From assembly GCA_965637545.1 (NCBI GenBank), contig OZ281494.1:17546001-17610000 (forward strand): a stretch of DNA of 64,000 nucleotides, read 5' to 3'. The notes under the pieces are model-generated. The model was not told where the DNA came from and made no database searches. It worked only from the letters and a program-made list of their open reading frames with translations. Shown here piece by piece: positions 3,960 to 48,919 of this stretch (position 1 is the first letter of the stretch; each line of letters begins with the position of its first letter). The translations under genes and the position numbers were made by a program. The stretch is from Phallusia mammillata (taxonomy: Eukaryota).

Positions 3960-4595
3960 TTATTCTCTGTACACCGATTTTTCAATTCCATCCTCCAAAT
4001 CGCCGTAACACAAATTGCCAAAAAACGTGGTGCACTCATACTTTGGATTATTTCTTACGTATTCCAAATAACCCGGGCTTCCAGGGTTAATGACGTTATC
4101 TGCTACAATCACGCTGCCATTGTGAATTAACTTTTGTTCTTCCAAGACCAAAAGGTCTTGCTTATATATTGTCTTCAAGTGGTCTAAAAACACAAAATCG
4201 AATGCTATTGATAGAGAACGAAGGACGTCTTGACTATTGCCATAAAGAACAGTTATTTGGTTTTTCATTCCAGCAAAGTCAACCATTTTTCTTGTGACAT
4301 CCACATTTGATTTATCACTTTCCACGCTAAATAACTTGCCATCTTTCGGTAAAGCTCTTGCAATTCTTAAGGCACTGTATCCTGCGTAAGCACCAAGCTC
4401 CAATGCTAACTGTGGTCGACAATCCCTGACAATTTTTTCCAAGTGGTTTCCTTTGGATTTACCAACATTTATAGCATCTTTTTCAAAGTTGTAGCAACAG
4501 AAGTCAATTGTATCAATAACGCTGGTCACATCGCCTTCGATAGCATTAGCCTGCACATATTCGAGTATTCGTTGCGGAATTGCTTTATCGGCCAT
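3960..4595 (-). CDS. COMT: Catechol O-methyltransferase-like protein, copy A (intronless)
   Basis: Motifs LELGAYAGYS, FDFVFLDH, VIVADNVINPG, EYVRNNPKYEC match the COMT family. First ATG is MADKAIPQR at 4595; the ORF track extends to a non-ATG start at 4646. Confidence 0.9.
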   Translation of the reverse strand: MADKAIPQRILEYVQANAIEGDVTSVIDTIDFCCYNFEKDAINVGKSKGNHLEKIVRDCRPQLALELGAYAGYSALRIARALPKDGKLFSVESDKSNVDVTRKMVDFAGMKNQITVLYGNSQDVLRSLSIAFDFVFLDHLKTIYKQDLLVLEEQKLIHNGSVIVADNVINPGSPGYLEYVRNNPKYECTTFFGNLCYGDLEDGIEKSVYRE

Positions 4596-7161
4596 TGCAA
4601 AACTAATGTTTACGCGACGAACGCTTGTGATCTGTGAACGCAACACAACGGAAGTGTTTAATACAACATGTTTTTGTTTTTCGATCTCTTGTACGGAAAT
4701 GTTGCAGTCTGTGGAAAATCTTGCGTTTTGAAATACTTTTTCGGCAAACTTATAGAACTTTTCTGCTGCAACTTGTTATTTGTAGCTCTCAAAAAGACAA
4801 ACGCATTTAATATATATTTTTAGCCTTTATATTTGATTTTGTTAAAACATCGAATGAAAGTTACAGGGTAATAACTTTGATAATGAACATAAATGTCGGA
4901 CATTAACTGAAGTCCTAACAATCCCAAACAACTTGACTTCACCGAAAGTATTTCTTAACGAGTTAATATTTTTTTTCTATTCCACACTGTAAATAGCTGG
5001 CTTAAAGTTCAAACACCAACATACAATCTGCCATATGCATTTATCTGCGTAATAACAATAACAAATGCTTGGTATATAACCTGTGACACACACCTAGCTA
5101 GGAATAGGCCTACTAATGCAATAACGAGCTGCAAAGATGTACTTTTTGATGTGAAGAATTCTTACGTTATTATCGTATTGACATGAGTCACGTGATAAAC
5201 AATATGTCCTAAGGGAAATACTTTTGGGGCGGTGTTTATGTCTTGGCAAATATTTGTACTGTAAACAACTCGAAACCTGATATATTACTGTCAATATAAA
5301 AACAACGCTAAATTTATTTAATCTGTTGCGTTATTGGCATATTAACGAATTAAATTGCCGTTTCTGATTGTGTTGCCCTTTCAAATGAAACAATAAACGT
5401 TAGCCCGATTTACAAGATATTTAGTGCAATACAGGCATTATATCAATTAAAAGTTGAAACAATTGGTAAAGGGTTTATGACCAATCTTTACACAAAATAA
5501 ATCTGGTTAAATTTTACCTGTATACTGTAAGAGTGCTGGGGTACTGTTGACTGCCATTTCAAGCTATTGACTAACTTTCGACCTAATCACAAAAATGCAT
5601 TACTAATTATTGCCAATCCCCTCTAAGAACGTTACAAGTTTTCGGTTGTTCACACGTGCATTGTTTCACATGTGAACAATAATGCTGTTGCATAACTTTA
5701 GTCCAAAGCACAAAGCGGAAGTGCCAGGCCTGTTGCGGCATGGGACGAACATGTAAACAAGCACTTTTCAATGAAACAATAAAACACATGCAAAAATGTT
5801 TATGGTGAAAAACCTGCTTGTGAACTTATCTCAACAAGTGCCCTGAAGCGCCGCATCACCGCAAGTGGCAAAAGTGTGTGCTTCAAAAGATAGCAAGCAT
5901 GCCAAGTACCAGCGAAAGTATGACACATTTTATTTCTATGACAAGTTTCTGTTTCCGTCTTGTGACAACATTTGGTACAAGAGTTTTTCAACTAAGCTGT
6001 TTACAAAATGGTTTGTGATATGGTTGGAAATAGTAAAGGAAAAGATATCAAGCATACCATCTACATGTGTTGTTCAATACAATGTTTTGGTAAAGTATTG
6101 TGAATTTGCTGAATTCGAAATGTTTTGTGTTATGCGGTACTGAAAAGTGAATGGTGTGACGTATCGTGTTCGATTTGCTAAAGCGGGAATTTACGTTCGT
6201 TGTCATAAAAACACATGCTGCTAAAAGCCCTTGGTTATAGCGTGTGCATCACCCAAGCTTCAGAAGGTATTAGGCATACATGTGTGACATGTTGGTATTG
6301 CTCTCATTCTATAATCTGGTCGTATATTGTTGTATGTATTCCATTGTTAATTTCTGATTTTTTACAAACTTGAACTGTTGCTTGTTTAGCAATGTCCATC
6401 AATGTACAGTATGTACGGGATAAATGGACTGGGGCTTTACGCCTGTCAGTAACATAAGTCAAATACAGGACTCTGGAATTGTTGTTTCACACAAACAGCA
6501 GCAGTTTAGTAACAGTAATTGAAGAATGTGTCTCGGCGGAAAAAGTTTTTTGATGCGAGGGAGTTTGTAGTGATAAGATTGTTGTATTGGATATTTGATT
6601 GTTGTAACATACATAATAGAAACATTTCCATCTTGTCTTCACCTGCAGACACCCATGAATACAAGCAAGACAGTTTTTAGAATGTTGGGGTTTTATGTGC
6701 AGTAGCCTATATATACGCAGCAAGTTTTTACTTCCAAAGTAAACAGTACGTTTGTCTAAAAAGTTGTTTATGTGATACGTTTGCAGTGTGAATTGCTACT
6801 TTACATCCTTCATTATTATGCCTTTTCAACCCAACAGTACTGCAAGTAAATTTTTTAAGGACAGTCAACTGATCAGCCGTAAATTCAAAATAGCAACCAT
6901 GAACACAACAACATATGAAAAGCGTATGTGAAAACAAAATAAATGTGTGTTTTGATAACTTGGACACAAAGCAGACTCTTTAAAAATCTTAAACTAGAAA
7001 TTTAAACTTTTAAATCGCTCTTCCGCAAATTCTTCTCACAAAAAGAAACTTATCACCACTTCCCATTACATTAAACAATAAAATAATATATTGCAGGTAT
7101 ATTACTGTAACTTGTTGATCCTGTGAGTGTAATTGAGAACATCACAAGAAATATAAGCGAC

Positions 7162-7749
7162 ATGGAATCCAACAATGAACTGCGTCAACCATCAAACGGT
7201 GCTGACGTGCAGGAAACTTGTCCTAAAGAGCAGTCACCTAATCCGTCGTGTAAAACTGCTGAAATACCAAACATTAAAACAGCGCAAGTGGTAAGGCGAC
7301 CTTGGTACAGACGGTTCCAACTGTGCTGTGATAATAGTATAGATGCTCGTGAATTGGAAGTCCAACTTCCTTCGGAACAGCGGGCTCTTCAAAATGCTGC
7401 GAATTCCGAATATTGCTGGCCAGGAGCGAATGGAAATGGGGTGTTTCTGGGCACATACACTACCGCGAAAAAATGGAATTTCATTTTGACCAACAAAGCA
7501 AAAAATAAAGGGTACCTCCAAGACCCATGCACGTTTAAGTACATAAAAGCAAATTCTAATAATAATTCTTTGAAAATGGAAACACCGAAAAAACTAAACA
7601 GCGACCACATTTTTTCGATCAATGTGGAAAACAAGTCCTCAAACGCATATGTCAAGCATCAGTCAAGCGGAAAGTACTTTGGAGTAAAAGAGAAGAACAA
7701 GTTTATTCTTGTGAATTGTGTCACCGATGCGGTTGGATTCAACCACTAA
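7162..7749 (+). CDS. Leaderless beta-trefoil-like (FGF/IL-1-type) protein, paralogue 1
   Basis: Intact 195-aa ORF from the ATG at 7162, with an acceptor TTGCAG ending at 7096. Shares EQR..EYCWP..WNF..DP..KYIKAN..KYFGV..FILV..AV.F.H* with four neighbours. The fold call is inference from a three-fold internal repeat. Confidence 0.75.
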   Translation: MESNNELRQPSNGADVQETCPKEQSPNPSCKTAEIPNIKTAQVVRRPWYRRFQLCCDNSIDARELEVQLPSEQRALQNAANSEYCWPGANGNGVFLGTYTTAKKWNFILTNKAKNKGYLQDPCTFKYIKANSNNNSLKMETPKKLNSDHIFSINVENKSSNAYVKHQSSGKYFGVKEKNKFILVNCVTDAVGFNH

Positions 7750-9012
7750 ACTACAAAGAAGATATTTTGACAAGTATATGACGACAGGTTTATGATTTAA
7801 TATTTTCGGTGTGAGATTTACTTGTATATACATCATGAGTTCTAACACCTGCAGAAACCTAATATTAATAAGCATTTTTGGCAAATTCCAGTCCGCCAGG
7901 TCGGCAAAGACGTTATAAATAGAGTCATGTGAATTTCAATTTCTGTCCTCACAATAATTGTTTTGTGCAAACCTGGGATTGTGACATGTGTTAGTAAATG
8001 TACAGTCATTTTCTTACCGACTATTTAAAGCTGTATAGCGTTTTGTTAAAAATTATTTCCATGTGCTTGTTATCCAAAAATAGTTTAGCGTTAGGTTGTT
8101 GTAATTTGTATTTTACGTAAGTTAGAAATTATGTGGTGAATAATAAATGTGTTTGACAGCAAATATGAGATGTAACGACAGGGCGCAATTACAAAACCTA
8201 TATATCAGGTTGCAACTTTTCCAAAAACCTAACATTTGAGAAGTATCCAGTGATATGTTTACGCTGTCAAAGCAAAATTCCTTACATTCTACAATTCGTT
8301 CACTCAAAATACAGTCCTTACAAGATCAAACGCCCAATACTGGCGCTTGTGTAACTAAATTCCTCTCGAGCTGTGTTTCGGCTGAGATTAGGTTGGGTTC
8401 GAATCCATACACTAAATTTTTGATGCTGGCTTAAATGAAGTCAATCAGTTACCGCAAGTGAAAGTAGTCTCTACTCAAAAAGGTACCATGGCATCCCATC
8501 CGCAGTGCTGCACCTTTCATGTATATTGACAGTATTTGGTAAAAAACTTCCAACAAACGTTTATGAATTAGCAGCATATAACGGTTGGATACAAATAGAA
8601 AAGAAGCTCTTTTTTCTTGTTATTTTAATCTGATTTTTTGTGATGTTGAGTAAATTACATTTTTGTTTCCCGGTTGCTTTTTACCATTAGTCTTTGATTG
8701 TGAGTTTTGTCTAGGGTAAAAAGAGTACGTTACGAGAAAAAAGACATATAGACTTTACACGTGTCCAATTACAAAAGCCAAAGACCAACGGTTCTAGTTT
8801 GGAATTAATCTGTTTTTAACGAAATTCAGTACAGTGTTTGAAAAGCGAGAGCAATTAAAGCAAGGCTGTTTTCAAAGCCCAAAGGTTTACGTGAAGTTGT
8901 ACATTGCACTGATTTGTGGTTAACGAGTTTAAAATCCATACGTATACTTTCAGAATACTTTTGCGTAATATGCGAGAAATGTTTAAGGTTATGTTTGTTT
9001 TGTGACTTAGAG

Positions 9013-9247
9013 CAGTGGTCGGCAACCGCCGGTCCGCGGCCCGGTACCGGTCCGCGAGGAGTTTGTTACCGGGCCGTATAATTTTTCAGGTTAAATGCTA
9101 TAAAACATTTTGCCCATGTATCCCGGGGATGATAAACTATTTTAAGCGTTTTTATTGCTAAATATTTGTAGTTTTTTGAAGACCGGTCCGCGATAAACTT
9201 TCACTTTCAAAAACGGTCCGCAGTGCAAAAAAGGTTGCCGACCCCTG
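9013..9247. mobile_element. hAT-type MITE
   Basis: TIR CAGTGGTCGGCAACC / GGTTGCCGACCCCTG; TSD ACTTAGAG / ACTTAAAG (7/8). Confidence 0.85.
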
Positions 9248-9428
9248 ACTTAAAGAGCATTAAACTGTAGTACAATTTTTGCCCGCTTTTGCAAAATTGG
9301 CCCTACAAAATTAGACTGCATTTGACTTACCGCTCTTACCTTACCTGTGCAGAAGACCAAACGACACAAGGCAAGAAAATTATTGTATTTTATTACTGCA
9401 TAGACTTAGGGTAATAACATTCAGAAAT

Positions 9429-10133
9429 ATGACTGACGTAAAAACCAACAAGGACAAGCCTCAAGCATCAAATGAGTTTGACGAGCAAGAAACTTCTAAC
9501 ATTCCAAAACAGCAATCACCTGATCCGGCCTGCAAAAGCGCTGAAATGGAAAGCCCAGATATTGTACATGGGGACATGTGTAGTGTTAACAGTACTCCAG
9601 TTCATCCTAATTTAGAAGAGGTTGGCAACCTTGATTCAATGTGCGAAACTGTTGGATTGGCTGAAGTTACCTCAATTACGATACAGGGTGGAAGTAGTTC
9701 TTTTCCATCGTTTGGTGGAAACAATACGTCTGTTACTGAATCACTTCTCACCACAGAGCAACGCGTTCTTCAAAAAGCTGGCACATCCGAATATTGCTGG
9801 CCGCGACCGAGGGGAAATGCATTGTTTCTGGACACATACCATACTCCGCCTAAATGGAATTTCGTCTTTACCAACAAGACAACAAATGAAGGTTTCCTTC
9901 AGGACCCAGACACATCTAAGTACATCAAAGCAAATACTAACAACAACTCTTTGAAAATGAAATCAACGTCTAATCCAAATATAACGCAGTATAATTTCTC
10001 GATATGTGGGGTAAATAGGAAAACAAACGTGTATGTACAACACAAAACAAGCAAAATGTATTTTGGGGTGGATGAAAGCAACAAGTTTATTCTTGTTGCA
10101 AATATCACGGCAGCGGTTAAATTTAATCACTAA
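9429..10133 (+). CDS. Leaderless beta-trefoil-like protein, paralogue 2 (longer N-terminal piece, no CC motif)
   Basis: Intact 234-aa ORF with the same C-terminal ~125-aa domain; acceptor-like TGCATAG about 25 nt upstream of the ATG. Confidence 0.75.
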   Translation: MTDVKTNKDKPQASNEFDEQETSNIPKQQSPDPACKSAEMESPDIVHGDMCSVNSTPVHPNLEEVGNLDSMCETVGLAEVTSITIQGGSSSFPSFGGNNTSVTESLLTTEQRVLQKAGTSEYCWPRPRGNALFLDTYHTPPKWNFVFTNKTTNEGFLQDPDTSKYIKANTNNNSLKMKSTSNPNITQYNFSICGVNRKTNVYVQHKTSKMYFGVDESNKFILVANITAAVKFNH

Positions 10134-12110
10134 ATTCAAATAATGCTTGCTTTATCGTAATTCAGTAGAGTTTTTTTTTCACGTATTTTTTTCAGCTTTT
10201 TCAAAAAGCCCTATCAATAAATAAAACACCAGTTTATCAAACTCAGTTCACTAAATTTCTTGTTTTTGGCGAACAAAGAGGTATTACTAATTTCTCCTAG
10301 GTGTTGTGGCCCAGATTTATTATCGTCATCTCCCCTCAATCGCCTAATTATTTTTCAGTAACCCCTTCACTGTTACCAACTCGGGGACCCCTGGCACCTA
10401 CTATTACTTTAGATTTAGAACAACAATCAATATTTTTTCCACCATCAGAACGATATGTTAAGTTTGGCTTTTGCGTAGTGTTTTTTAGATTGACAATTGC
10501 ATGGGTAACTCTTAAATATGTACAGTACATCATTTCAACATTTTAATCAACAATTTTGACAAATCTTGGTACGCCTGTAGCTTTAGAAACCACGCCTTTA
10601 TTTTGCTGCAGGGAATGCATGAAAAGCTACCATGCTATAGCCAGGCACACTGCTATTCATATACAGGAATATGCCGTTATTGTGAGTTTACATGCTGTTG
10701 GAGAGTTGATCTTTGTAACAAAATATGTTTCGGGACGTTGTGTATGTTCACGCTAAACGGCTTTTAAATACAAGATCACCAAATGCAACAACATCGGACT
10801 TTGACGCATTGTAGTTTGTTTGAAAATGATTTGGTTGGAGAAACAATATACGTTAACATGTTAGTACTTCCACGGTGTGTTTTATGGTGAGATATAATAT
10901 ATGTTTTAAGCAATAAAGGTAATGCTGTCTAGTTTTGCAGTGCCATTTCTATCTACATCTCTGTCTTTGCAACACCAACTGTTTTGTTTAAACACGGATT
11001 TTGACACGAATTTGTACATGTACATTTACTTTGCTAAAGACTATTTTATATTCGTAATTAATTAAGGATAGCCTACTGTAGTTAGTTGCGGTTTATTCTT
11101 TCAAGTAAAAGTTGCGTGATTTATGTCCAACACAGATCTAGGTAAATTTAGAATAAAAATTGACAGGATAATATTTTGATCAGAAATGCATGGACTAACA
11201 TGACGCTTGAATGAGATTCTTAAATTGGATAAAATTATAAAATACGGAGCAATGTTGTGAGTTTTTCAAACCTAACATTTGCGGAGTGTTGTCGTCTGTG
11301 GTCAATTAAATCCCCTATATAAAACCTAAGCAGGCTGCAAAATAAATTGCTTACCAACTAAAACACGTCAAGCTAAATACAGTTATCTCGTAACAAATAC
11401 CGAATACTAGCGGTTTTGTAGTTGAATTCCACTCGTGATGGCAAGCGTATCTACCATAGAATCGCATATATTAGATTTCGGCTTCATGCCGAAGTTTAAA
11501 CAATGCGTCCGGTCTTCAAAAGATCTTGTCATCGTATTTTGTTCTTGTGTTGTTATATATTTTAAGTGGTTTTTCGGATTATTCTGAAACATTATCCTTT
11601 AACTAATTGTACTGCTTTTCCATTCAATTCTGTAAGGGCGTCTGTACCAGATAAATAGACTGCAGGGACTTTACGCGTGTCCGATAACAAGCGTTCGTTA
11701 ACAAGGGATCTGATGGTTGGAATTCCTCTGTTTCAGACGAATATTAGTACAGCAGTTAAAAGGCGACAGTGACTAAAGTAAGTCCATTTCAGTGTTAAAG
11801 GTGTTATGTGCGGTCTGTACGCTGCACCGATTTGTAACCTATTAGTTTAAGTTTTATGTCCCAAGAATAAAAGTGCTGTGTAATAGGTGCATATGTGTCA
11901 GATATCGCCAGATTGTAAATTCTGTCGGAAATCTTTACTTTTTCCACTTGCAGCTCGAAATCATTTATTACAACGTGAAGGCTTATATTAACTGTAGAGT
12001 AAATTTGCTATTCTCTTTGGCATTAACATGAAATGATTCGATAATATATTGCAGGTATATTACTGTAACTTGTTGCTCCTGTGAGTGTAATTGAAAACAT
12101 TCTTAGAAAC

Positions 12111-12707
12111 ATGAGCGACATGGAACCCAACAATGAACTTCGTCAACCATCAAACGGAGCTGACGTGCAAGAAACTTGTTCAAAAGAGCAGTCACCTAAT
12201 CCGTCGTGTAAAACTGCTGAAATACCAAACATTAAAACAGCGCAAGTGGTAAGGCGACCTTGGTACAGACGGTTCCAACTGTGCAGTGATAATAGTATAG
12301 ATGCTCGTGAATTGGAAGTCCAACTTTCTTCGGAACAGCGGGCTCTTCAAAATGCTGCGAATTCCGAATATTGCTGGCCAGGAGCGAATGGAAATGGGGT
12401 GTTTCTGGGCACATACACTACCGCGAAAAAATGGAATTTCATTTTGACCAACAAAACAAATAATGAAGGGTACCTCCAAGATCCCAACACGTCAAAGTAC
12501 ATAAAAGCAAATTCAAGTAATGATTCTATAAGAATGAATAAAACTTCCAATCTAAACAGCGACCATGTTTTTTCGATCAATGCGGTAAACAAGTCCCCAA
12601 ACTCATATGTGAAACATAAGGCAAGCGGGAAGTACTTTGGGGTAAATAAGAATAATAAGTTTATTCTTGTGGCCACTGTCACCGCAGCGGTTGGATTCGC
12701 CCACTAA
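12111..12707 (+). CDS. Leaderless beta-trefoil-like protein, paralogue 3
   Basis: Intact ORF from ATG 12111 (MSDMEPNN). Nearly identical to paralogue 1 in the 5' part and diverged in the 3' part. Confidence 0.75.
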   Translation: MSDMEPNNELRQPSNGADVQETCSKEQSPNPSCKTAEIPNIKTAQVVRRPWYRRFQLCSDNSIDARELEVQLSSEQRALQNAANSEYCWPGANGNGVFLGTYTTAKKWNFILTNKTNNEGYLQDPNTSKYIKANSSNDSIRMNKTSNLNSDHVFSINAVNKSPNSYVKHKASGKYFGVNKNNKFILVATVTAAVGFAH

Positions 12708-13624
12708 ACTACAAATAAGAAATTTTGACAAGTATATGACGATATGTTTATGTTTTAATATTTTTGGTGTTTGATTTTATTTGTGATATGTATATTTATA
12801 TCAAATTATTGTCCGTCAAACCTACAAAAGCGATATAGATCGAGCCTGTATTTCGTCGCACGGAAATACATACAAATCTGTGGTATTACGGCTAAGGCAG
12901 TCCTTGTGTTCTATAACAGTATGGTCTTGCACATATGCCGGTTACAACATCATCGACTACCATAACAAAGGCCGTGTGGTGTGAAATGTCATTCTTTGGC
13001 AAATATTACTTTAACAACATTGTGTTTGCGCGTTGTGGTTTCTTGTATGCTGGGATAAGTTTCTAGGTAATGCATCATCAATTTTGTTGACGTTTTGTGC
13101 AAACTTAAATCTCTGACACATGCTGGTAAATGTAATCTGTAATCATTTTCCGACACTATTTTAAAGCCGTACCTGTGTTGTAGTTTTGAAAATTTTCTCT
13201 GTTGCTTGTTATTTAATGCTTGTTTTGGGTGATCTTATTGTAGCTTGCATTTTAAAGTGGAAATTGCCTGTTTATAATAAACAAGGTTATCAGCATTTTT
13301 TAGATGTTACGACTGGGCACAAATACCACTCTCCGACAAATCTAACATTTGCAGAGCATTTTTGCGCCAAAGCTTTAGATTGGGGATTAAATTCCTTACA
13401 AAAATTTACAAGTGGTTCACGGGGAATATACTATCTTACATAATCAAACGCCCAACATTAGAGCTTGTGCAACTAAATCCCTCTCTTTTAGCCGAATGAA
13501 CTACAGCAGAAATTAACTACTTTCTGGAATGTGATCAGAGCTGTTTGTCAACTGATTAGAGATTGGGTCGGACAATTTGAGTCGGGTTCAAGTTTTAAGT
13601 TTTTGTAATAAGGACGGTCTTGAG

Positions 13625-13837
13625 CAGTGGTTCTCAAACTTTTTATAGTCGGGCCAAATGGTAGTTTTTTAAGTGTGTAGGGAGCCGCAAACACGAAAAC
13701 CTCAGAAAATCACTAAAGATTATTTCCTTGAAAGCTAAAATAGCAATCTTTGGTGGTTTTCTGAGGTCTGGTGCGAGCCGCAAAATAAGTAGTTGGGAGC
13801 CGCATGCGGCCCTGAGAGTCGCATTTGAGAATCACTG
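13625..13837. mobile_element. hAT-type MITE
   Basis: TIR CAGTGGTTCTCAAA / TTTGAGAATCACTG; perfect TSD GTCTTGAG. Confidence 0.9.
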
Positions 13838-13988
13838 GTCTTGAGCATAAGTTTTTGACACATTTTCGTCGTAATATCTCTTTCTTAGCACGAATATGTA
13901 GGCATATGTGTATGTTGCTTACAACCGAACATTTCGTATACATTCGTTGTTAATGTAGGCCTATCAACCAAATTGTGTCTGCCTAAAC

Positions 13989-14267
13989 CAGTGGTTCTCA
14001 ACCTTTTTTCTTTCGTGGCCCACTTTCATTGCAAAAAAAATTCTGTGGCCCAGTAAATTTTTAAGATAGAAAGAAAACAACTATAAAATAGGTTCAGAAC
14101 AAAAAACAAAACAAAAACATTCCTTCTCAATTCCTCCCCAAGCCATTACTCTTGTAAAATTGAGTGTAGTGACACAAATGAAAGTAAATTCTTAAAAAAA
14201 GCTTTCTATTTGATTGGTCTGTGGCCCAATCAAAATGCTTCCATGGCCCACTGGTTGAGAACCACTG
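13989..14267. mobile_element. hAT-type MITE
   Basis: TIR CAGTGGTTCTCAACC / GGTTGAGAACCACTG; perfect TSD GCCTAAAC. Confidence 0.9.
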
Positions 14268-14559
14268 GCCTAAACTAAGTCTGCGCACATGCTGCTTTTA
14301 AAATAGTTGGGTTTGGGCTGATTGGGTCGGTTTGGGGCTTAAAATGGGATCCGCTTAAAACACTGGTTCCAGGATTACGGTTCCACTTATTTTGTGTGCG
14401 ATCATGGCACTGAGTTTTTGTTACCATGAACTTAACACACTCAGTTGGGCATTAAATAAATAGAGCTTTGGTAGGGATCTATAGAGACATATATGTCTCA
14501 AAAGCAGGTATCCAGTGTAAACATGTTACAATACAGACCTATTTCGATGTCGCCGTAAT

Positions 14560-14836
14560 TTTAATGATTGAGTATTTATTGACGACGGGATTCCAATCCA
14601 TAGATGTATACAGCGTATGGTCTTGATTCTTGAACAGGCTGTTAAAATCTCTTCCGACCAAAACGAGTTGTGTAATTAGTTCCTCGATATTTTTTTAATA
14701 ATTTAACATAAATATCAAAAAGAAAATAGAAATTAGAAATGTGTGAAGCCACCTGCATTGCACCTAAGGGGAAATATTGTTGGCCAACCGGCAGGGCATA
14801 AAATCGTCGAATGCCCAGCCACAATAAACCTTTCAA
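14560..14836 (-). mobile_element. Possible decayed LINE apurinic-endonuclease fragment
   Basis: The minus strand reads ...QLVLVGRDFN..., resembling the APE GDFN motif, but is frameshifted and short. Confidence 0.25.
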
Positions 14837-15117
14837 AAAACGTTAATCAAACTACATGTTGGGTATACATTTTAGCCAACTAGCAGGTGGTATAATCATA
14901 AAGAAGAGACTTTTTTAACCTGGTGGCAACTTGCAAGTTATTATTTTTTAGGTCTAAAGCACAGAATTTGCACCATTGAATGCAACCCAATTGCAAAAGG
15001 CAATTCAGATTGGGTTACCAGATGTCCATAATTTTCCGGACATGGCATAAAATATGTGCCCCGAAATAATTGTTTTAAAAAAAGTCTAACGGTTCGGATT
15101 GTGGGCATCCAATAGAC

Positions 15118-16077
15118 CAGGGCTACTCAAACTTTCTTGTTCTGCGACCCCATTTTAAAACAGAAATTTCTACGCGACCCCTTGATGGGTATGATGTAAA
15201 GAAATACTTATATTTTATATATATACCGTCTTATGTCGCCTGAAAAGCTTAAATTCATTTCTAACTTGATACACAGATTGGCAGTCTTAGTTTTTATGAC
15301 GCCATAATCTATATTGTGACGCTTGCGGTATCTGCTTTTTCGCATTGTTTGTGAACAATAGGCATAAATAAGTCTGGCGCATATGGCTACTAGGCTGGTA
15401 ATACTCTTTTAAGTTCTACAAAATGTGTTTAGAGCAGTTTGAATTAGAGATGTACCGAATATTCGGTTTGCCGAATTTATTCGGCCGAATCGGCCACTTT
15501 TGCAAAGATTCGGTTTCGGCCGAATAATTTGTTGCGATTCGGCCGAAACCGAATCTTTTATGAACACACATTTGAAACGTCAAGCGTGTCTTTCCTGCTT
15601 AGTACCAACGAAAATCCTGTCAGTTATTATATTTTTTACCACATTATCGTTTTCCCCACTGCAGACAACTAAATAGTAATTCATTGCCGGGTTGAAAATT
15701 ATGCTTAAGGCAATGTTAAACCCCACAGAACTGAAATAAGGACGAAACACAACCATTCTGCACTCATTGCCTGGTAGATAAACTTATGTTTTCATGTCAT
15801 ACGCGTACCGTACGACTTCGCGTGACGTCATAAATGATTCGGTTGATTCGGCCGAATTTATTCGGCAAAACCGCCGAATATTCGGTTTCGGCCGAATCGA
15901 AATTTCGCCGATTCGGTACATCACTAGTTTGAATACATGGGAATGATGTTTCAACAATAAATATACGCACGTATACCATTTATTGTGACTCACATAATAA
16001 CCCATAATGTTTCGCGACCCCAAAATTATATTACGCGACCCCAATTGGGGTCGCGACCCACAGTTTGAGAAGCCCTG
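15118..16077. mobile_element. hAT-type MITE carrying a nested MITE
   Basis: TIR CAGGGCTACTCAAACT / AGTTTGAGAAGCCCTG; perfect TSD CAATAGAC. Confidence 0.9.
15445..15926. mobile_element. TAG-terminal hAT-type MITE (482 bp) with TTCGGCCGAA subterminal palindromes
   Basis: TIR TAGAGATGTACCGAAT / ATTCGGTACATCACTA; TSD GTTTGAAT. An inverted copy of the same length lies at 26652-27133. Confidence 0.9.
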
Positions 16078-18407
16078 CAATAGACTACAATACTTTTCAA
16101 ACTGATGAGGATCAGAATGAAAGATCAGAGACAGAGGGAAAAATACCTTACCGAAACGGTCCCCCAAATTTCTCCAGCGGTTTCCCAAAATTTGGACTTG
16201 CAACTACAACTACAGTTTTTGGTATTTAAATGAAACACTTGCGGTCTCTTAAAACTACTTAGCGGTCACCCAAACCAAACCTTAAAAAATCCCTGCCGGT
16301 AGATACACAAAAGCAATCGCTTAGGATTCAAGCCGTTTCAGTTGATAACTTCAATTATGGAATTTACCATTGCTGTTGTGTAATTGCAGTGACCATAATA
16401 CTGTACACCAAATACATTAAAAAGTGATGTTATCTTGACAATTAAACAAACAAGAGAAACTAAGACTAAAAATTTGCCTAAAATAATAAAAAATAACAAG
16501 ACAATTAAATTGACACAAACTCTCAACTATACATGTCATGCAAAGAATAAATACTCAAATCAAATCTGTCATTTGTGCGTGTACATTGCGTTTTGAAAAA
16601 GCGCTTGCCCAAACTTGAAGAACCAATTCACCACACAGTCACGCACTTATCTGAATAACCACCTCTGTTGGGCCAATTACCGCAAGTAGCAAAAAGTGTG
16701 CTTTATATAGCAAGCATACCAACGAAAAGAAGAAAGTATGCCATGTTTTTTTCATTAATTGATTGTATTATCTGTTTTTTGACCACGACACAAGAGTTGA
16801 CACAAGAGTTGGTTCATGACATGGTTAGAATTAGTATAGACGCTGTTTTTTTCTTTGAGAATTTCAAACAGTGTGCTGTGAAAAGTGTCAAATTATGCCG
16901 CAACAATTTTTGGCACAATTCAACACGTTGTGTATTTAATACCTGACTTGAAGACGAGTGTGCATGACAAGCAAAAGCCTCATTGTGTTCTAATTTGAAA
17001 TCAAAGCAGTCGTCCGTTACAGCACATTAAACATTAACTTCTTTGAACGATTTTAAGTTTTCGTAGCCTGCAAATTGTGCCGCAAAATATAGTTTGTTGG
17101 TGTAAATCCAAAAATATCGGAAAATGCTGGTTTGGGTGCTTGATTCCGTGGAAGTATAATTTTTGTGGCCAACAATGTGAATTGCACCTGTACGTGGTGG
17201 TATGTGTCCTCCACAGGTATTTAATGCTAATATTATTATCTCATCCCGAAATGTTTGCGAAAATTTAAAGCTTGCCTAATAACGAAATCAAAATACCAAC
17301 GACCCCGAAGCTAAATTTCTCAGCTTTATGTTAACAGCAGTATGGTTGTAAGCAACATTAATTATTTAAAAAAAAATGGTGGTAGGGATGTTTTAAGTTT
17401 CAAAATAAGCTGTAAATAGTACATCTTAAATCGAAATTTGTTTGGTGACTTCTGTCGATAATCGTTACTAAAAACTCTAAATTTAACGTCAGAATTATGT
17501 GCATGTAAAATTATCAAATTAATATTTTTTTAAACTTTATTAAAAACGTAAATCCAACGATGTTGCGTAAAAAGACCAATAGGTGCAGAATTAAACCGCA
17601 CGCTTCACAATCGGAAGTTCATTGAGACAAGAAGGGTTTTCAACAAAAGAATAAATAAAACAAGCACATTCTTTTCTATAAAGTACCAATCCATGCACTT
17701 ATCTGAACAAGTGCCCGGAGGTGCCACATTACCGCAACCATAGTATTACATTGCTTTGAGCTCATATATAAAGTTTCGGTTTCGGAACAAAATGTTGAAG
17801 AAAAATATTGTATAAATTTGCAATGTACGAAAGAGATTTTTGGTATGATTAAAAATGGTAATGCACTGTTAATTGATTTGTACTACCGATATATTTGTGT
17901 GACTTCTGTGTTCAAATTGCCACTGCATTGATTTGCATGGTCAGCCAAGTGAGTCTTACATAAAACATGCTTTCCCAAGCAATGTTGATTATAATTTATT
18001 ATGTATGTATTGCTTTCATTGTTTAGTTTGATCATGAGCCTTGTATCTATTTCCCTGTTGATTTTCAGCTGTTTCAAATTTAAGCCGTTGCTTGCACTGC
18101 TTTTTTTGCTTTTCTACGCAAAAATCTACGCACGTGGTAAATACACAGGGGCTTTGTAAGCGTATCTGATAATTAAAGCCGGGTACTTAGGGTTCTGGAT
18201 TTTAGTTCCGCTGTTTCCATTAAACAGCAGAACTGTGATTGGAAAACTACAGTATTAAAACAAAAGATTTTATGCGCAGTTTTGCATTGCGGAGGCTTAC
18301 AGTTTGTTTGAGTGTGATAATTGTGATTAATAGAATAAAGAAACTAGTACAGGTAAGTTTTTGTAATCTATACTACCTAAAGTGTGGATAAGAGCACTTG
18401 AAGAAAT

Positions 18408-19008
18408 ATGAGTGTCGTACAAACCAACAAAGAAATGCCTCAACCGTCAAATGTCACTGACGATTATGAAATATCTTCAGAAGAGCAGTTTACTGATCCG
18501 CCGTGCGAAACTGTTGAAAAAGAACGAAAAGGAATCGCAATTACCTCTTCAAGAGGGAGAAACCCTTTTCAATATTTACTCTGTTGTAGAAACAGTAGAA
18601 GTGCTTCTGAGTTACCTAAACGTTTCACCACAGAGCAACGGGTTCTTAAAAAAATTCAAACTGCCGAATATTGCTGGCCGCGAAAGAATGGTGGAAATGC
18701 GTTGTTTCTAGACACATACATTACACCACCTAAATGGAATTTTATTTTTACCAATCGGAAAAATGAAGGTTATCTATTCAACCCAGGCACAATCAAGTAC
18801 ATCAAGGCAAATTCAAGAAAAAATTCACTGAAAATGAAACTCTTAAGTAATCCAAAATCGGCGTTTGTTTTCTTGATTAAAAGGGATAAACAGATCCGCA
18901 GGGTTATATGTGCAACACAAAGAGAGCGGAAAATACTTTGGGGTAAATGGAAGCAATAAGTTCATTCTTGTGGCAAATGCCCAGGCAGGAGTTGAATTCA
19001 ATCATTAA
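18408..19008 (+). pseudogene. Beta-trefoil-like paralogue 4, +1 frameshift
   Basis: Removing one A from the run at 18879-18882 restores ...FLIKGINRSAGLYVQHKESGKYFGVNGSNKFILVANAQAGVEFNH* (stop ends 19008). A sequencing error is not excluded. Confidence 0.75.
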
Positions 19009-19373
19009 ATTGATAACTTTGATTAATCAGATAATGGTTAGTGGTGACTGTGTGAGTTAATAAATTCACAAACATATTTAAATAATATGACATGTGTTCA
19101 TGTTTAGATTTTTTGATACGCTGGCATGGTTTTTGCTTGACATTAGTTATTAATGTGTGAAACACTTTTAGGTCTGCAAGAGACTAGTCCAATGCGTTTT
19201 GCCGTACGGAAATGTATGGAACAGAGTTTCGATTTGGTGTTATTTATACATTAGTATGCACTAGTTACCGTTAGTTCTGCATATCAAAATTTATCCGTTT
19301 CGAAATATGCTTTGGCACATGTATTTAAAATTATGAAGTAATTATAACGTCAAAATTGCTGTTTTAGTTGCAC

Positions 19374-19770
19374 GGTAGAGCCACTAACACAGGAACTCAC
19401 AACACGCCGGTTTGGGTATTTCTGGTAGGTGGCACAACGGAAAATATGCGTTTATGGTGACAATAATTGCTGGGTCAGCAAATTGCAAATTGCTGAGGGC
19501 GGGCATCGCCCAAACGCGGTACGCTCACAATGAGTCCCCCGTCGAGTTGTCTGCTTTTTATTGCAAGTCCGTTGATCACTTTTTATTTAATTTCTTTGAC
19601 TTGAGCAGTTGGTGACTTCAATTTAGTTCTACCCGTCGAGGATCGGGAACCACTGGGTTGGAGCAAAAGCGACCGAGATAGGATTAGAACCCATGACCTT
19701 GTCATCAAAAGGTGCTAAACCACTTGGCCAACTTGGTGTTGTGAGTTCCTGTGTTAGTGTCTTAGTAGCC
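19374..19770. mobile_element. Degenerate copy of the GGTAGAG foldback MITE family (see 49095)
   Basis: Left GGTAGAGCCACTAACACAGGAACTCACAACAC is inverted at 19736 (GTGTTGTGAGTTCCTGTGTTAGTG). Internal TTCTGGTAGGTGGC...GCGTTTATGGTG matches 49151-49190. The right terminus and TSD are unclear. Confidence 0.6.
19669..19733 (-). other. tRNA-derived Pol III promoter (SINE-head-like)
   Basis: Minus strand has A-box TGGCCAAGTGG and B-box GGTTCTAATCC with tRNA-like spacing. No complete cloverleaf was recognised. Confidence 0.5.
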
Positions 19771-20673
19771 TCACTGAGTTGTACCTCAAATTAAAAAATT
19801 CATACAAATCATAAATCTGTGCATTTATTTTGCCACTGACTATTTTTATTACTAGCTGTTTGCTTGTTTTTGACTTACAGTGCTTCCTGTATTGTGTTTG
19901 TACCTTAAGCAGCAAACAAAGTCACAACTCAAAATAAATAAGATGCAACAAAAATGAGTTAAAAAAATTCAGTGGCTTGGAAAAGCAAGAACACTTAAAA
20001 TGCACGTGCAAGTAAACGTCATCTTATTGGTTAGACATGTTTCACTCTCATTGTTGCTGTGCACTACTCTGATACATTTTGAACCGGGAATTTGATCCGA
20101 TTAAGATAATTCGGTTTAGAAATAAAGTAATAGCTCTCTTCCGCTTCAGACCCACATACGAAAGTCACGTCAAAAACAAAACTTTTGAACCCTATAAGCT
20201 AAACAAGTTTGAGCAAAATATCAGTAAAAGTTTTTTTTTTCGCTAAGCGACTTCAAACTTAAAGAAAAATGCATTGATTGCCTTGCAAGCATTAGGTAAC
20301 TTCAACAAGAAATGTGGGAGTGTCATTGCTGCATCATAACCGAGTTTCGCGTGTTTCATTTAGATGACAAAAGCCCGATACCAACAGCTCTGAAAATTAA
20401 ATACTCTGTTTTGAATTAACGTCAGTAGAAAGCAACAGTAATTAGAAAAAAACGATCAGCATCCAAAGGTTTTATGTGCATAGGTCAGGAAGTTTTGCGT
20501 ATTAAGCTGTAAACATGACATTTATGCGAAGCAGTATACCTGCAAAAATGATCAGTTGCTTAGTATTGACTTACCGCTGTAACCTTGCAATACAGCAACA
20601 CATTGAGATAATAGAAAAACTGTATTTAATTTTCAGATTCACTGTCTAGATTACGGGTAAAAACATTAAAAAA

Positions 20674-21273
20674 ATGAGCGACGTGGAGTCCGACATTAAA
20701 TTGCCTCGACCATCTAAAAGTACTGACGAGCAAGAAACTTGAGCAAAAGAGCAGTCACTTGATCCGGTCGGCAAACCTGATCAAATGTCCGCAATAACTA
20801 CCAATATAACGCTAGGGGCAAGACGTCCTTGGCAATTTTTACTGTGTTGTGAAAACAAAACTGCTGTTACTGAATTAATTGGCAACATGACAGCAGAAAA
20901 GCGGATTCTTCAAAAAGCTTACACATCTGAATATTGCTGGCCGCGTCCTAATAGAAATGCATTGTTCTTGGATGTTTACACGACAGCACCTACATGGAAC
21001 TTTATTTTAACCAGCGAAGTAGGGAATGAAGGTATCTTACAAGACCCAGACACTTCCAAATGGGTCCAAGCAAATCCCAGCCGAAATTCTTTACGAATGA
21101 AATCCATTACTTATAGTCCGCTCTCAGCGTTTACTTTTTCGATACACGGAATAAGTACGTTCCAAAACGTATTTGTGCAACATAAACAAAGTGGAAAATA
21201 CGTTGGGGTCAACAGTAGAAATCAGTTTATTCTTGTGGCAAACATCAGCGCAGCGGTGGAATTTAATCACTAA
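20674..21273 (+). pseudogene. Beta-trefoil-like paralogue 5; nonsense at codon 23, downstream 162-aa ORF intact
   Basis: The homologous start MSDVESD at 20674 hits TGA at 20740-20742 (Cys TGT in paralogues 1/3). An in-frame ATG at 20785 gives RRPWQFLLCC plus the full domain. Confidence 0.7.
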
Positions 21274-27324: not shown

Positions 27325-29372
27325 GTTGAGTTGAGTTGAGTTGAGTTTATTTCGCCGGGCAAAATCGTAGCAGCACAATTGGGCTAAAATATTCACCAGG
27401 CCGGAAATAGCTGCGCAACGTTCAGACGTTAAAAAGCGCGACAAAGATGAGGGTACAATTGGTGGAGGGATGGAAGACGCGCTGCAGCTACACCGTTATT
27501 ATAAGCGTTATTTGACGGGGACTCACATCAGAGGGTGAGGTTGGCGCATTTGGACATCGAGACTGGGGGGGGCAACGTTGGTGGAACCAGTCAAGTTGGG
27601 ACCTAAAAGCTAACCACCCGTGTTAGGGAAAGAGGGTGGGGTTCAACAGGAAAAGAAACCACCCAAAGAAACCCTGTTGGATAGTTTCAGGCGCCGGAAG
27701 AAAGGGTGCAGCACAAAACTCAGTGACGATTTTAAACAGTACTAAAAAAAAAAAAAAAAAAATTGGCACAAAAAGTACAAACAGATAAATAAACAAATAA
27801 CAAATAAACAAAGTAAAATAACATTAAAAATGAGTCTATGAGTTGTCGCGTCTCAGAGAGGGGTTCAGGGCTTCAGGAGTGGTCCATTTCCTAGCCAGTT
27901 GCAGCTGCCTGTGGAAACAACTGCAGCAAATTATCTGTTCATGCAACTACCAGACATTAGCACACTTGCAAGTAGTTAGGTTAGTTCACACAGCACGCGG
28001 TGCATGATAAGTTTAAACAGTTTCAAAGTGAAATAAAGTGCAAGTCACCACAACAAAGACGTGCAAAGACAAACCCACACACACACATACGCGCGCACGC
28101 GCTGAAGTGCAATAACAGTTAAGTTTAGATAAACTTTACTGGTAACAACCAGTTGAATTTGTAGTTTGCGTTACTTACAACAGGAAAATTTGTTAGTAGA
28201 AGTGATACTATAGTGACAGTGAATAATGTTAAAAAGCGGTCATTGTACAGTCATCAACAACACAAAACACATGCAGGTTGTTTGCCACTGTATCGGACCT
28301 CGGGTGCCTACGACTAGGAGCTTTTAGAAGCAAAGTGCAGTTGTTATGATAATAATAGTAACAGGATAGTTACATAATTCACATCGGTGCTGTTAAGGTT
28401 TGTGCAAAAGATATGAAGTGAAGTGATTTGCAAACATTCTTGCGCTAGGTGCATTTCTAATTTTTTCTGGGATATTATTCCAAATCTTCGGACCCACATA
28501 TTTAATTGACTGCTGACTTTGTATTGTGCGGTAAAACGGTTTTAAGAAAGAGGAGCTGGCACGAGTGTGCATTGTTAGGTTGTTAACGTTTATGAAATTG
28601 TTGAATACATCTGGAAGTGTTTTATTATTATACTTATACATGAACAAGGAGGTTTCAAGCTCGAATAGCTCCTTGATGGAAAGCAGAGAGTTTTCCTCCA
28701 TTACTTTGGTCAGATCACTTTTATGTTTTAAGCCAAATACACATTTTAGGAATTTATGACATATATTCTGGAGTTTAGTAATTAATCTTGATTGCCCATG
28801 GTGCCAATTGGTTATGCAGTACCGTATGTGGGAAATAATTAAACAATGATACAGATTTAATAGGGCTTTTTTATTGAGAAATTGTTTTATCTTGTAAACG
28901 ATTGCCAAGTTTCTTTTACATGACGAAATCAGTTTGTTAATCTGCTTCTTCCAGGATAGCCTTTCATCCACAATTATCCCTAAAAATTTGATGGAATCTA
29001 CCTGCTCTAGTACATGGCCTTTGATTTTCACTTGAACCGGTTGACAGCTGTGGTTTTGTTGACGAAAGAGGATGGTTTTAGTTTTAGGAATGTTGAGGGT
29101 CAGTTTATTAGCAGTTAGCCAGTTATTAATATTGGACATTTCCTTGTTCGCCATACACTGTAGTGTGCTGTTGGATTTAGCTGATAATAAGATGGTTGTG
29201 TCATCAGCGAACATTGATGGCGATCCAAATTTTAGACAATTAGCAAAGTCATTTATGTAAATAATGAACAATAGGGGACCTAATTGAGACCCTTGGGGTA
29301 CGCCTAGAGGGATAGAGCACACATTTTCTGATGTGGTTCTGTTGTACACCACTTTTTGTGTGCGGCCAGATT
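27325..29372 (-). mobile_element. 5'-truncated CR1/L2-group LINE with ~1.07-kb 3' UTR and (CTCAA)n tail
   Basis: RT C-terminal half (28393-29372), long 3' UTR, then AATAAA followed by CTCAA repeats (+ strand GTTGAGTTGAG... at 27325-27345). No TSD seen. Confidence 0.8.
28393..29372 (-). CDS. Non-LTR retrotransposon reverse transcriptase, C-terminal fragment
   Basis: SGRTQKVVYN, GVPQGSQLGPLLFIIYIND, FADDT, KFLGIIVDERLSWK; ORF track 28393..29352. Confidence 0.9.
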
Positions 29373-48274: not shown

Positions 48275-48919
48275 TTAGGTTTGCTTTTTATACACAGCCT
48301 TTTCAATTCCATCTTCCCTGTCACTATATTCCAACTTGCTCATATATGTTGTACATTCATACTTGGGACTATTTCTGACATACTCCAAATACTCAGGACA
48401 TCCAGGAAAAACAATGTTGTCAGCTGCAATTACACTTCCACTGTGAATCAAATTGCATTCTTCAAGAAGTAAAAGATCAGGCTTGTACAATTCCTTAGTG
48501 TGATCAAGAAACACAAAATCAAAGCCAGAGACTGTAAGAGACTTGATGACATCAGGACTACTACCACAGAGTACAGTCACTTTGTTATCCATTCCTGCAT
48601 ATTGAATCATTTTTCTTGTCACTTCTGCATGGTGCTCATTGTATTCAATGCTGTACAATTTGCCATCTGCCGGTAAGGCTCGAGAAATTCTTAGTGCACT
48701 GTATCCAGCATATGCACCAATTTCTAGGGCAGTCTTTGGGCTGCAACTTTTTACAATTTCATCCAAATATTTTCCTTTTTCATCACCAACGTTTATTGCT
48801 TCTCTTTCAAATTTGTAGCAGAAGTTATCAATGGTGTCAATGACGTTACTGACATTGCCTTTAATTGCATGCTTCTGTACATGTTCTAATATTTTCTGTG
48901 GAATGGATTTTTGATCCAT
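48275..48919 (-). CDS. COMT: Catechol O-methyltransferase-like protein, copy C (intronless, intact, 214 aa)
   Basis: NVGDEKG, LEIGAYAGYS, FDFVFLDH, AADNIVFPG motifs. Confidence 0.92.
   Translation of the reverse strand: MDQKSIPQKILEHVQKHAIKGNVSNVIDTIDNFCYKFEREAINVGDEKGKYLDEIVKSCSPKTALEIGAYAGYSALRISRALPADGKLYSIEYNEHHAEVTRKMIQYAGMDNKVTVLCGSSPDVIKSLTVSGFDFVFLDHTKELYKPDLLLLEECNLIHSGSVIAADNIVFPGCPEYLEYVRNSPKYECTTYMSKLEYSDREDGIEKAVYKKQT

What the first reader, a model, noticed from the sequence alone, without database searches (positions are those of the whole stretch)
7097..21273. Tandem array of five leaderless FGF/IL-1-like beta-trefoil genes: candidate undescribed cytokine/effector family
Seen: five co-oriented paralogues (7162, 9429, 12111, 18408, 20674), each encoded by one coding exon, with no signal peptide, a variable acidic/Ser/Pro N-terminal piece and a shared ~125-aa C-terminal domain. 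That domain splits into three ~40-aa repeats: ALQNAANSEYCW..WNF / YLQDPCTFKYIKA..HIF / YVKHQSSGKYFGV..VGF. By eye the third repeat lines up with FGF1 ([30 protein letters not shown]..KAILF versus DHIFSINVENKSSNAYVKHQSSGKYFGVKEKN..DAVGF), and LKME resembles IL-1 LQLE. The Cys conserved in FGF cores is absent. Known: FGF1/2 and IL-1 family members are leaderless beta-trefoils, IL-1 precursors carry a cleavable N-terminal pro-piece, and canonical FGF cores contain introns. Inference: a lineage-specific, rapidly turning-over family of non-classically secreted or intracellular trefoil effectors in a tunicate.
Basis: partly seen in the sequence, partly recalled or inferred. Interest (0 to 1): 0.88.

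Follow-up and report, generated by a model that had tools for sequence, protein, structure and literature searches.

The report
Orphan sea-squirt beta-trefoil gene array
This stretch holds five tandem copies (three intact, two broken) of a small gene family, so far seen only in two sea-squirt-like genomes, whose protein folds like FGF and IL-1; no test shows it is related to either, and its function and expression are still unknown.

Summary
The five co-oriented paralogues are real. Copies 1-3 are intact. Copy 4 has a one-base frameshift at an A run (18879-18882). Copy 5 has an in-frame TGA (20740-20742) in its N-terminal piece.

Each protein has a disordered, leaderless N-terminal piece and a compact ~125-aa domain. 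AlphaFold2 models that domain confidently as a 12-strand beta-trefoil.

The family has nine loci in this genome, in two clusters about 530 kb apart. At least four more genes occur in one other sequenced organism, and nothing else matched among 1.84 billion proteins. The trefoil is under purifying selection (dN/dS 0.23-0.40). Copies 1 and 3 are a gene-conversion mosaic.

I found no RNA evidence for copies 1-3.

The scan already reported the second cluster of this family (s1-344577), and my results agree with that report. Verdict: an undescribed, taxon-restricted beta-trefoil family, with no evidence that it is a cytokine.

The parts
7162..7749 (+). Copy 1: intact 195-aa gene (disordered residues 1-66, trefoil 67-195). 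The ancestral ATG at 7153 has mutated to ATA.
9429..10133 (+). Copy 2: intact 234-aa gene with a longer Ser/Gly-rich N-terminal piece that lacks the W-Y-R-R...C-C motif.
12111..12707 (+). Copy 3: intact 198-aa gene. It forms a gene-conversion mosaic with copy 1: dS is 0.056 over copy-1 codons 1-112 and 0.32 over codons 113-195.
18408..19008 (+). Copy 4: broken by a one-base frameshift at or beside the A run 18879-18882. The trefoil tail continues in another frame to the stop at 19006-19008. This is either a real pseudogene or a homopolymer assembly error.
20674..21273 (+). Copy 5: the ancestral start is at 20674 and an in-frame TGA lies at 20740-20742. The frame is open from the ATG at 20785 (162 aa). 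That shorter product keeps the R-R-P-W...C-C motif and the whole trefoil.
7097..7148 (+). Possible 52-nt mini-intron in the 5' untranslated region (CAG|GTATAT ... CAAG|), or a trans-splice acceptor just upstream of the start. The counterpart in copy 3 is 12055-12106, and copy 4 has a similar CAG|GTAAGT. This is inferred from sequence only; there is no RNA support.
7064..7829 (+). Unit shared between copies 1 and 3 at 89% identity (counterpart 12021-12789). The flanks beyond it are only 67-76% alike.

Best explanation
The array is one of two clusters of an undescribed, taxon-restricted protein family.

Shown:
- Each gene is an intronless open frame. It encodes a leaderless protein with a disordered, polar or acidic N-terminal piece of about 65 residues and a compact 125-aa beta-trefoil.
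- In most members the N-terminal piece ends in an aromatic/basic motif with one or two cysteines, W-Y-[KR]-R-x-x-x-C-C.
- The family grows by tandem duplication, is homogenised in part by gene conversion, and loses copies. Two of the five copies here are broken.
- The trefoil core has been kept by purifying selection, and the replacements between young copies fall in loops.

Inferred:
- The trefoil is a binding module that works through one asymmetric surface on a protein or a single ligand. It is not a three-site lectin.
- It acts inside the cell, or is released without a signal peptide.
- The N-terminal piece regulates or localises it. S-acylation of the Cys-Cys motif, or removal of the piece by a protease, are the obvious possibilities.

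The family has the fold of FGF and IL-1, but on every test I ran it is a member of neither.
For: The genes are real and the fold is clear:
- Five ORFs lie in the window. The genome holds nine loci, and only nine.
- At least four intronless genes occur in one other organism, run DRR090687, two of them in tandem.
- Nothing else matched among 1.84 billion representative proteins or in the 5.8-billion-sequence word search.
- The fold is confident. The domain model has pLDDT 89.7 with 12 strands. In the full-length model all five predictions average 73-76, the trefoil scores 93-97, and residues 1-66 fall below 50.

Selection and evolution:
- Trefoil dN/dS is 0.23-0.40 between old pairs and 0.6-0.8 between young pairs.
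- Between copies 1 and 3, dS differs six-fold between the two halves of the gene.
- 23 of the 29 trefoil replacements between copies 1 and 3 lie outside strands (P = 0.008).
- Each organism's genes form their own clade.

A single asymmetric binding surface:
- The internal repeats are not significant as sequence.
- The invariant polar residues differ between the three lobes: Y-C-W-P, Q-x-P and H-x-x-S-G.

No leader sequence.
Against: - Copies 1-3 have no expression evidence. No indexed RNA run holds them, and four putative RNA assemblies of the same species cover only a repeat at 9007-9254.
- No protein of this species' older RNA runs turned up in the protein searches.
- The binding partner, the location in the cell and any processing are all untested.
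- The motif cysteines are not universal. Copy 2 and the L005 gene lack them.
- dN/dS of 0.7 between copies 1 and 3 is also what relaxed constraint would give.
Confidence: 0.6

Rival explanations
1. The family is a leaderless defence lectin, like the mussel mytilectins or SeviL or the fungal cytoplasmic ricin-B-like lectins. The trefoil would bind glycans of microbes or prey and be released from damaged cells.
For: - The language-model neighbours are RicinB_lectin_2, CCL2-like and Inhibitor_I66 clusters.
- The ESM Atlas structure neighbours are ricin-B domains.
- Tandem arrays with variable loops are typical of recognition proteins.
Against: - No ricin-B or other lectin Pfam model matches any member, even at E 10.
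- There is no Q-x-W motif, and no motif is repeated in all three lobes.
- Lectin trefoils do not stand out above FGF or IL-33. All lie within about 1.5 Z units.
Confidence: 0.2
2. The family is the tunicates' missing IL-1. It would be a highly derived, retroposed IL-1-superfamily gene that lost its PDZ domain and introns. The N-terminal piece would act as a cleavable pro-piece, and the mature trefoil would be released without a signal peptide.
For: - The architecture fits: no leader, a disordered N-terminal piece, then a trefoil.
- An Asp lies in the linker before the trefoil in 7 of 11 members.
- Fontenla-Iglesias et al. 2026 (PMC13736523) found IL-1 homologues across Eumetazoa but none in Ciona, Botryllus or Styela. 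A gap therefore exists.
Against: - The IL-33 hit weakens as the profile is broadened (E 0.18 with 11 sequences). It is E 1.1 for the window subfamily alone and absent from the other half of the family.
- The Pfam IL1 model matches no member and nothing near the array.
- Strand 9 carries V-x-H in place of the (F/L)ES motif.
- The trefoil is intronless in both organisms, whereas IL-1 trefoils have 3-5 exons with conserved phases.
- There is no PDZ domain.
- The linker Asp is neither in one alignment column nor universal.
Confidence: 0.07
3. The five copies in this window are silent or decaying relics, and only the second cluster, if either, is functional.
For: - Two of the five copies are broken, and copy 1 has lost its ancestral start.
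- No RNA evidence was found.
- dN/dS is about 0.7 between copies 1 and 3.
- The only putative RNA run with a notable share of words (6%) concerns the second cluster.
Against: - Three frames of 195-234 codons are intact.
- Trefoil dN/dS is 0.23-0.33 between copies 1-3 and 5 and the L005 gene, across dS of about 0.85-1.7.
- The start context and an upstream splice-like element are conserved.
- The RNA runs are few, of unknown tissue, and available only as contigs.
Confidence: 0.12
4. The family derives from an FGF, as an intracellular FHF-like retrogene family.
Against: - The Pfam FGF model finds six multi-exon FGF genes elsewhere in the genome but not the array, even at E 10. No member matches it.
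- hhalign against this genome's own FGF cores gives 8% probability, and the alignment is out of register.
- Symfoil proteins are idealised trefoils, so a match to them reflects a compact fold rather than descent.
Confidence: 0.02

Closest known systems
IL-1 superfamily (IL-33, IL-1alpha/beta and the IL-1anc proteins of Fontenla-Iglesias et al. 2026)
   Same: Both are leaderless and have an N-terminal non-trefoil piece followed by a C-terminal 12-strand beta-trefoil. Their genes evolve fast and sit in clusters. IL-33 is the top, though weak, PDB sequence hit and a good structural match.
   Different: - There is no Pfam IL1 match.
- Strand 9 has V-x-H, not (F/L)ES.
- The trefoil is intronless.
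- There is no PDZ domain.
- The IL-33 hit is not reproducible across the family.
- No receptor, processing or induction data exist.
FGF family, including the leaderless FGF1/2 and the intracellular FGF11-14
   Same: The fold and size are the same. Foldseek's first hits are FGF1-derived designs.
   Different: - There is no Pfam FGF match.
- The genome's six true FGF genes lie elsewhere and have the canonical introns.
- The profile-profile comparison is negative.
Leaderless beta-trefoil lectins (mytilectins, SeviL, fungal ricin-B-like lectins) and ricin-B/HA33 domains
   Different: - No lectin Pfam model matches.
- There is no Q-x-W or other motif repeated in all three lobes.
- None of those lectins has a disordered N-terminal piece of this kind.
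The second cluster of the same family, reported earlier by this scan (s1-344577)
   Same: It belongs to the same family and lies about 530 kb downstream on the same contig. I found it independently.
   Different: The window copies plus the L005 gene form their own strongly supported subfamily (100/98). Their N-terminal piece differs, and two of the window's members are broken.

Membership tests
beta-trefoil fold (structural class) | Twelve strands arranged as three four-strand lobes, with high structural similarity to solved trefoils over the whole domain | tested here: met
FGF (Pfam PF00167) | Match to the FGF profile above the curated cut-off | tested here: not met
   No member matches, even at E 10. 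A whole-genome scan with PF00167 finds six other genes and none in either cluster.
FGF (Pfam PF00167) | Core split by the two conserved introns | tested here: not met
   The genome's own FGF genes match exon by exon, at profile positions about 1-38, 33-72 and 67-124. The array genes have one uninterrupted frame.
FGF (Pfam PF00167) | In-register profile-profile similarity to FGF cores | tested here: not met
   hhalign against six FGF cores from this genome gives 8% probability, with the family's third lobe aligned to the FGF second lobe.
IL-1 superfamily (Pfam PF00340; criteria of PMC13736523) | Match to the IL1 profile | tested here: not met
   No member matches. The best genome hit has E 1.7 and lies on another contig.
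IL-1 superfamily (Pfam PF00340; criteria of PMC13736523) | (F/L)ES motif in beta-strand 9 | tested here: not met
   Strand 9 reads Y-V-K-H-Q. V and H are invariant or nearly so, and they align with the F-E-C of IL-33.
IL-1 superfamily (Pfam PF00340; criteria of PMC13736523) | Trefoil encoded by 3-5 exons with conserved intron phases; an N-terminal PDZ domain in the ancestral form | tested here: not met
   The family is intronless in both organisms. There is no PDZ or any other Pfam domain.
IL-1 superfamily (Pfam PF00340; criteria of PMC13736523) | Reproducible remote sequence similarity to a family member | tested here: inconclusive
   IL-33 gives E 0.04 with 8 sequences, 0.18 with 11, 1.1 for the window subfamily alone, and no hit for the other half of the family.
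IL-1 superfamily (Pfam PF00340; criteria of PMC13736523) | Caspase or other protease processing, immune induction, receptor binding | not testable with these tools
   These need experiments.
Ricin-B / R-type lectins (PF00652, PF14200) and mytilectins | Profile match and a sugar-binding motif repeated in the three lobes (Q-x-W or equivalent) | tested here: not met
   No lectin family matches at E 10. The lobes are not significantly alike as sequence. No Q-x-W appears in the alignment.
Fascin / hisactophilin-type actin-binding trefoils | Match to the Fascin profile | tested here: not met
   One of 11 members matches, at E 0.12 and below the cut-off.

The most novel reading that the evidence does not exclude
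These genes are the tunicate counterpart of IL-1, either as a very derived, retroposed IL-1 homologue or as an independent replacement. They would be leaderless alarmin-like trefoils held inactive or localised by the N-terminal piece, and released and processed on cell damage. That would fill the gap left by the 2026 survey, which found IL-1 homologues across Eumetazoa but none in tunicates.
Probability: 0.07. Interest if true: 0.85.

Novelty: new variant of a known kind. Interest (0 to 1): 0.4.

Why it matters
Beta-trefoils are a common scaffold for cytokines, growth factors, lectins and inhibitors. A new leaderless trefoil family restricted to sea squirts, expanding and decaying in tandem arrays, is a reasonable candidate for a recognition or signalling role in the closest invertebrate relatives of vertebrates. 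It is of some added interest because a recent survey found no IL-1 in tunicates. At present the value is descriptive: a family definition, its gene count, its mode of evolution and a confident fold. Function and expression remain open.

Tried and rejected
- Pfam scans of all members at E up to 10 gave nothing useful.
- The word-based search of 5.8 billion proteins gave no hit with copy 1, and with the profile it only re-found P0002.
- Structure searches of the PDB by Foldseek and by two VIA-align modes, and of the ESM Atlas, show the fold clearly but cannot tell the trefoil superfamilies apart.
- I followed the IL-33 lead with broader and with split profiles, and it did not hold.
- Internal-repeat detection by hhalign was not significant.
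- I rejected FGF kinship by profile-profile comparison with the genome's own FGF cores.
- Reads: the single read-laying run, on 6900-12899 with four runs guessed to be RNA, showed only a dispersed repeat at 9007-9254. I therefore could not check the frameshift of copy 4 or the stop of copy 5 against reads. I also could not locate the 6% share of words that run X15 holds for the second cluster.
- I could not compare the family with IL-1anc sequences, because no tool gives them as a reference.
Full report
**Observation**

The window holds five co-oriented open frames of one family, at 7162-7749, 9429-10133, 12111-12707, 18408-19008 and 20674-21273. Three are intact.
- Copy 4 changes frame at or beside the A run 18879-18882. 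Its last 41 codons, which still read as family sequence, lie in another frame and end at 19006-19008.
- Copy 5 has a TGA at 20740-20742, 22 codons after its ancestral start. An in-frame ATG at 20785 would give a 162-aa product that keeps the whole trefoil.
- Copy 1 has lost the ancestral start (ATG to ATA) and uses an ATG three codons later.

A local tblastn finds no further copy in the window, and the window has no runs of N.

**Architecture**

All members begin at a conserved Met. None has a hydrophobic N-terminal stretch. The first ~65 residues are polar or acidic, and AlphaFold2 predicts them as disordered, with pLDDT below 50.

In most members this piece ends in an aromatic/basic motif with one or two cysteines, for example R-R-P-W-Y-R-R-F-Q-L-C-C in copy 1. 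Copy 2 and the L005 gene lack it.

The last ~125 residues fold with high confidence as 12 strands in three lobes. The domain model has pLDDT 89.7 and pTM 0.84. In the full-length model the trefoil scores 93-97, and all five predictions agree.

The three lobes are clear in the structure. As sequence repeats they are not significant (hhalign E 0.045-0.43 in local mode).

**Which trefoil?**

The structure searches agree on the fold but not on a family.
- Foldseek and the ESM Atlas give the same mixed picture, and so do the language-model neighbours.

Sequence tests are negative.
- No Pfam family matches any member, even at E 10.
- The FGF profile finds six multi-exon FGF genes elsewhere in the genome and nothing in either cluster.
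- The IL1 profile finds nothing. Its best hit has E 1.7 and lies on another contig.
- hhalign against the genome's own FGF cores gives 8% probability, and the alignment is out of register.

The one positive lead was IL-33 as the best PDB profile hit, at E 0.04. It weakened to 0.18 when three sequences from a second organism were added. It was 1.1 for the window subfamily alone and absent for the other half of the family. A true remote relationship should strengthen with a broader profile, so I treat this hit as chance.

The criteria used by Fontenla-Iglesias et al. 2026 for IL-1 homologues are an (F/L)ES motif in strand 9, a trefoil of 3-5 exons with conserved phases, and an ancestral PDZ domain. 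None is met. Strand 9 carries V-x-H, the genes are intronless in both organisms, and there is no PDZ domain.

**Distribution**

- In this genome the family has exactly nine detectable loci: the five here, and four about 530 kb downstream on the same contig.
- An exhaustive HMM search of 1.84 billion representative proteins found only four true relatives. All come from one public run, DRR090687. Two of them lie in tandem on one contig, and one was under-called by the gene finder but is a full open frame.
- A tree puts the other organism's four genes in one group and this genome's nine in another (support 86/87). This genome's nine split into two strongly supported subfamilies. The window's five copies plus the L005 gene form one of them (100/98). 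Each lineage has therefore expanded the family on its own.
- The genome is an animal genome with six FGF genes and GH6 domains, which fits a tunicate.

**Selection and mode of evolution**

- Trefoil dN/dS is 0.23-0.40 between older pairs, so the domain has been maintained as a protein. It is 0.6-0.8 between the youngest pairs. The N-terminal piece evolves faster, at 0.5-1.0.
- Copies 1 and 3 share an 89%-identical unit (7064-7829 against 12021-12789), with flanks only 67-76% alike.
- Within that gene pair, codons 1-112 have dS 0.056 and codons 113-195 have dS 0.32. Because synonymous divergence itself differs six-fold, this is gene conversion of the 5' part, not just selection on the 3' part.
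- In the diverged part dN/dS is 0.66-1.57 depending on the method, which does not settle anything.
- 23 of the 29 trefoil replacements between copies 1 and 3 lie outside strands (P = 0.008). This confirms the scan's separate note on the mosaic (s1-385363).

**Expression**

- No indexed run on record as RNA holds the 6-kb stretch with copies 1-3.
- Contigs of four runs of the same species, guessed to be RNA, cover only a dispersed repeat at 9007-9254.
- For the second cluster, one such run holds 6% of the sampled words.
- The earlier follow-up on the second cluster reported partial expression. I did not test that.

Expression of the window's copies is therefore unproven.

Upstream of copies 1, 3 and 4 there is a conserved CAG|GTA element and an AG just before the start. 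These would fit a 52-nt intron in the 5' untranslated region or a trans-splice acceptor. This is inference only.

**Explanation**

Shown: the genes are real and selected. They encode a leaderless, disordered piece plus a trefoil. They are confined to two organisms in the data, and they evolve by duplication, conversion and loss.

Inferred: the trefoil is a binding module with one asymmetric surface. The invariant polar residues differ between lobes (Y-C-W-P, Q-x-P and H-x-x-S-G), and no motif is repeated in all three. That fits protein-binding trefoils better than three-site lectins. It would act in the cytosol or nucleus, or be released without a signal peptide. The N-terminal piece would localise or regulate it.

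Rivals are a leaderless lectin (0.2), silent relics in this window (0.12), a very derived IL-1 (0.07) and an FGF derivative (0.02).

**Novelty**

I found no paper describing the family. It is a new sequence family within a well-known fold.

The scan had already found the family's other cluster on other DNA (s1-344577) and reached the same conclusion. This window adds the second subfamily, the broken copies, the gene-conversion mosaic, and explicit negative tests for FGF and IL-1.

Noticed in passing
window 3960-4646 (-) and 48275-48919 (-): Two single-exon catechol-O-methyltransferase-like paralogues (Pfam Methyltransf_3, E 4e-20 and 4e-26) flank the array and the retroelements.
   Followed up: partly
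window 39178-45042 (+): An uninterrupted 1954-aa Pao/BEL retrotransposon polyprotein (Peptidase_A17, RVT_1, integrase zinc domain, DUF1759, DUF5641). It sits in a G+C-rich island (0.45-0.50, against about 0.36 around it). I observed it only.
   Followed up: partly
window 28393-29352 (-): A 319-aa ORF with the C-terminal half of a reverse transcriptase (RVT_1, E 1e-12), probably a truncated LINE-like element.
   Followed up: partly
window 9007-9254: A dispersed repeat of about 250 bp lies just upstream of copy 2. Many contigs of four putative RNA runs hold it at 90-99% identity and then run on into unrelated sequence, so it looks like a mobile element carried inside many transcripts.
   Followed up: partly
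L027 2999-3433 (+) = L005 104-538, G000:C1:18080998-18081432: A 144-aa ORF lies about 1 kb from the L005 family gene. It has sub-threshold trefoil hits (FGF E 0.083, fascin 0.2) and a weak profile match to the family (hhalign E 0.0014, probability 17%). It may be a very divergent relative or one exon of another trefoil gene.
   Followed up: partly
L007, L008 and L009 N-termini, and P0001 residues 25-40: The N-terminal motif P-C-I-E-M-L-Q-Q-N is identical between this genome's second-cluster genes and P0001 of the other organism. Synonymous sites between them are saturated, so this short linear motif in the disordered piece is under strong constraint.
   Followed up: no
window 54116-54802 (+) and 57975-58592 (+): Two ORFs without a firm family. 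The first has a hydrophobic N-terminal segment. The second has a short sub-threshold Glyco_hydro_6 hit (E 0.006). Clear GH6 domains lie on other contigs (C3, C6).
   Followed up: partly
G000: C5:13.28 Mb, C2:15.64 Mb, C7:20.33 Mb, C4:25.15 Mb, C5:10.55 Mb, C1:3.22 Mb: Six canonical multi-exon FGF genes, found with the Pfam FGF profile.
   Followed up: partly
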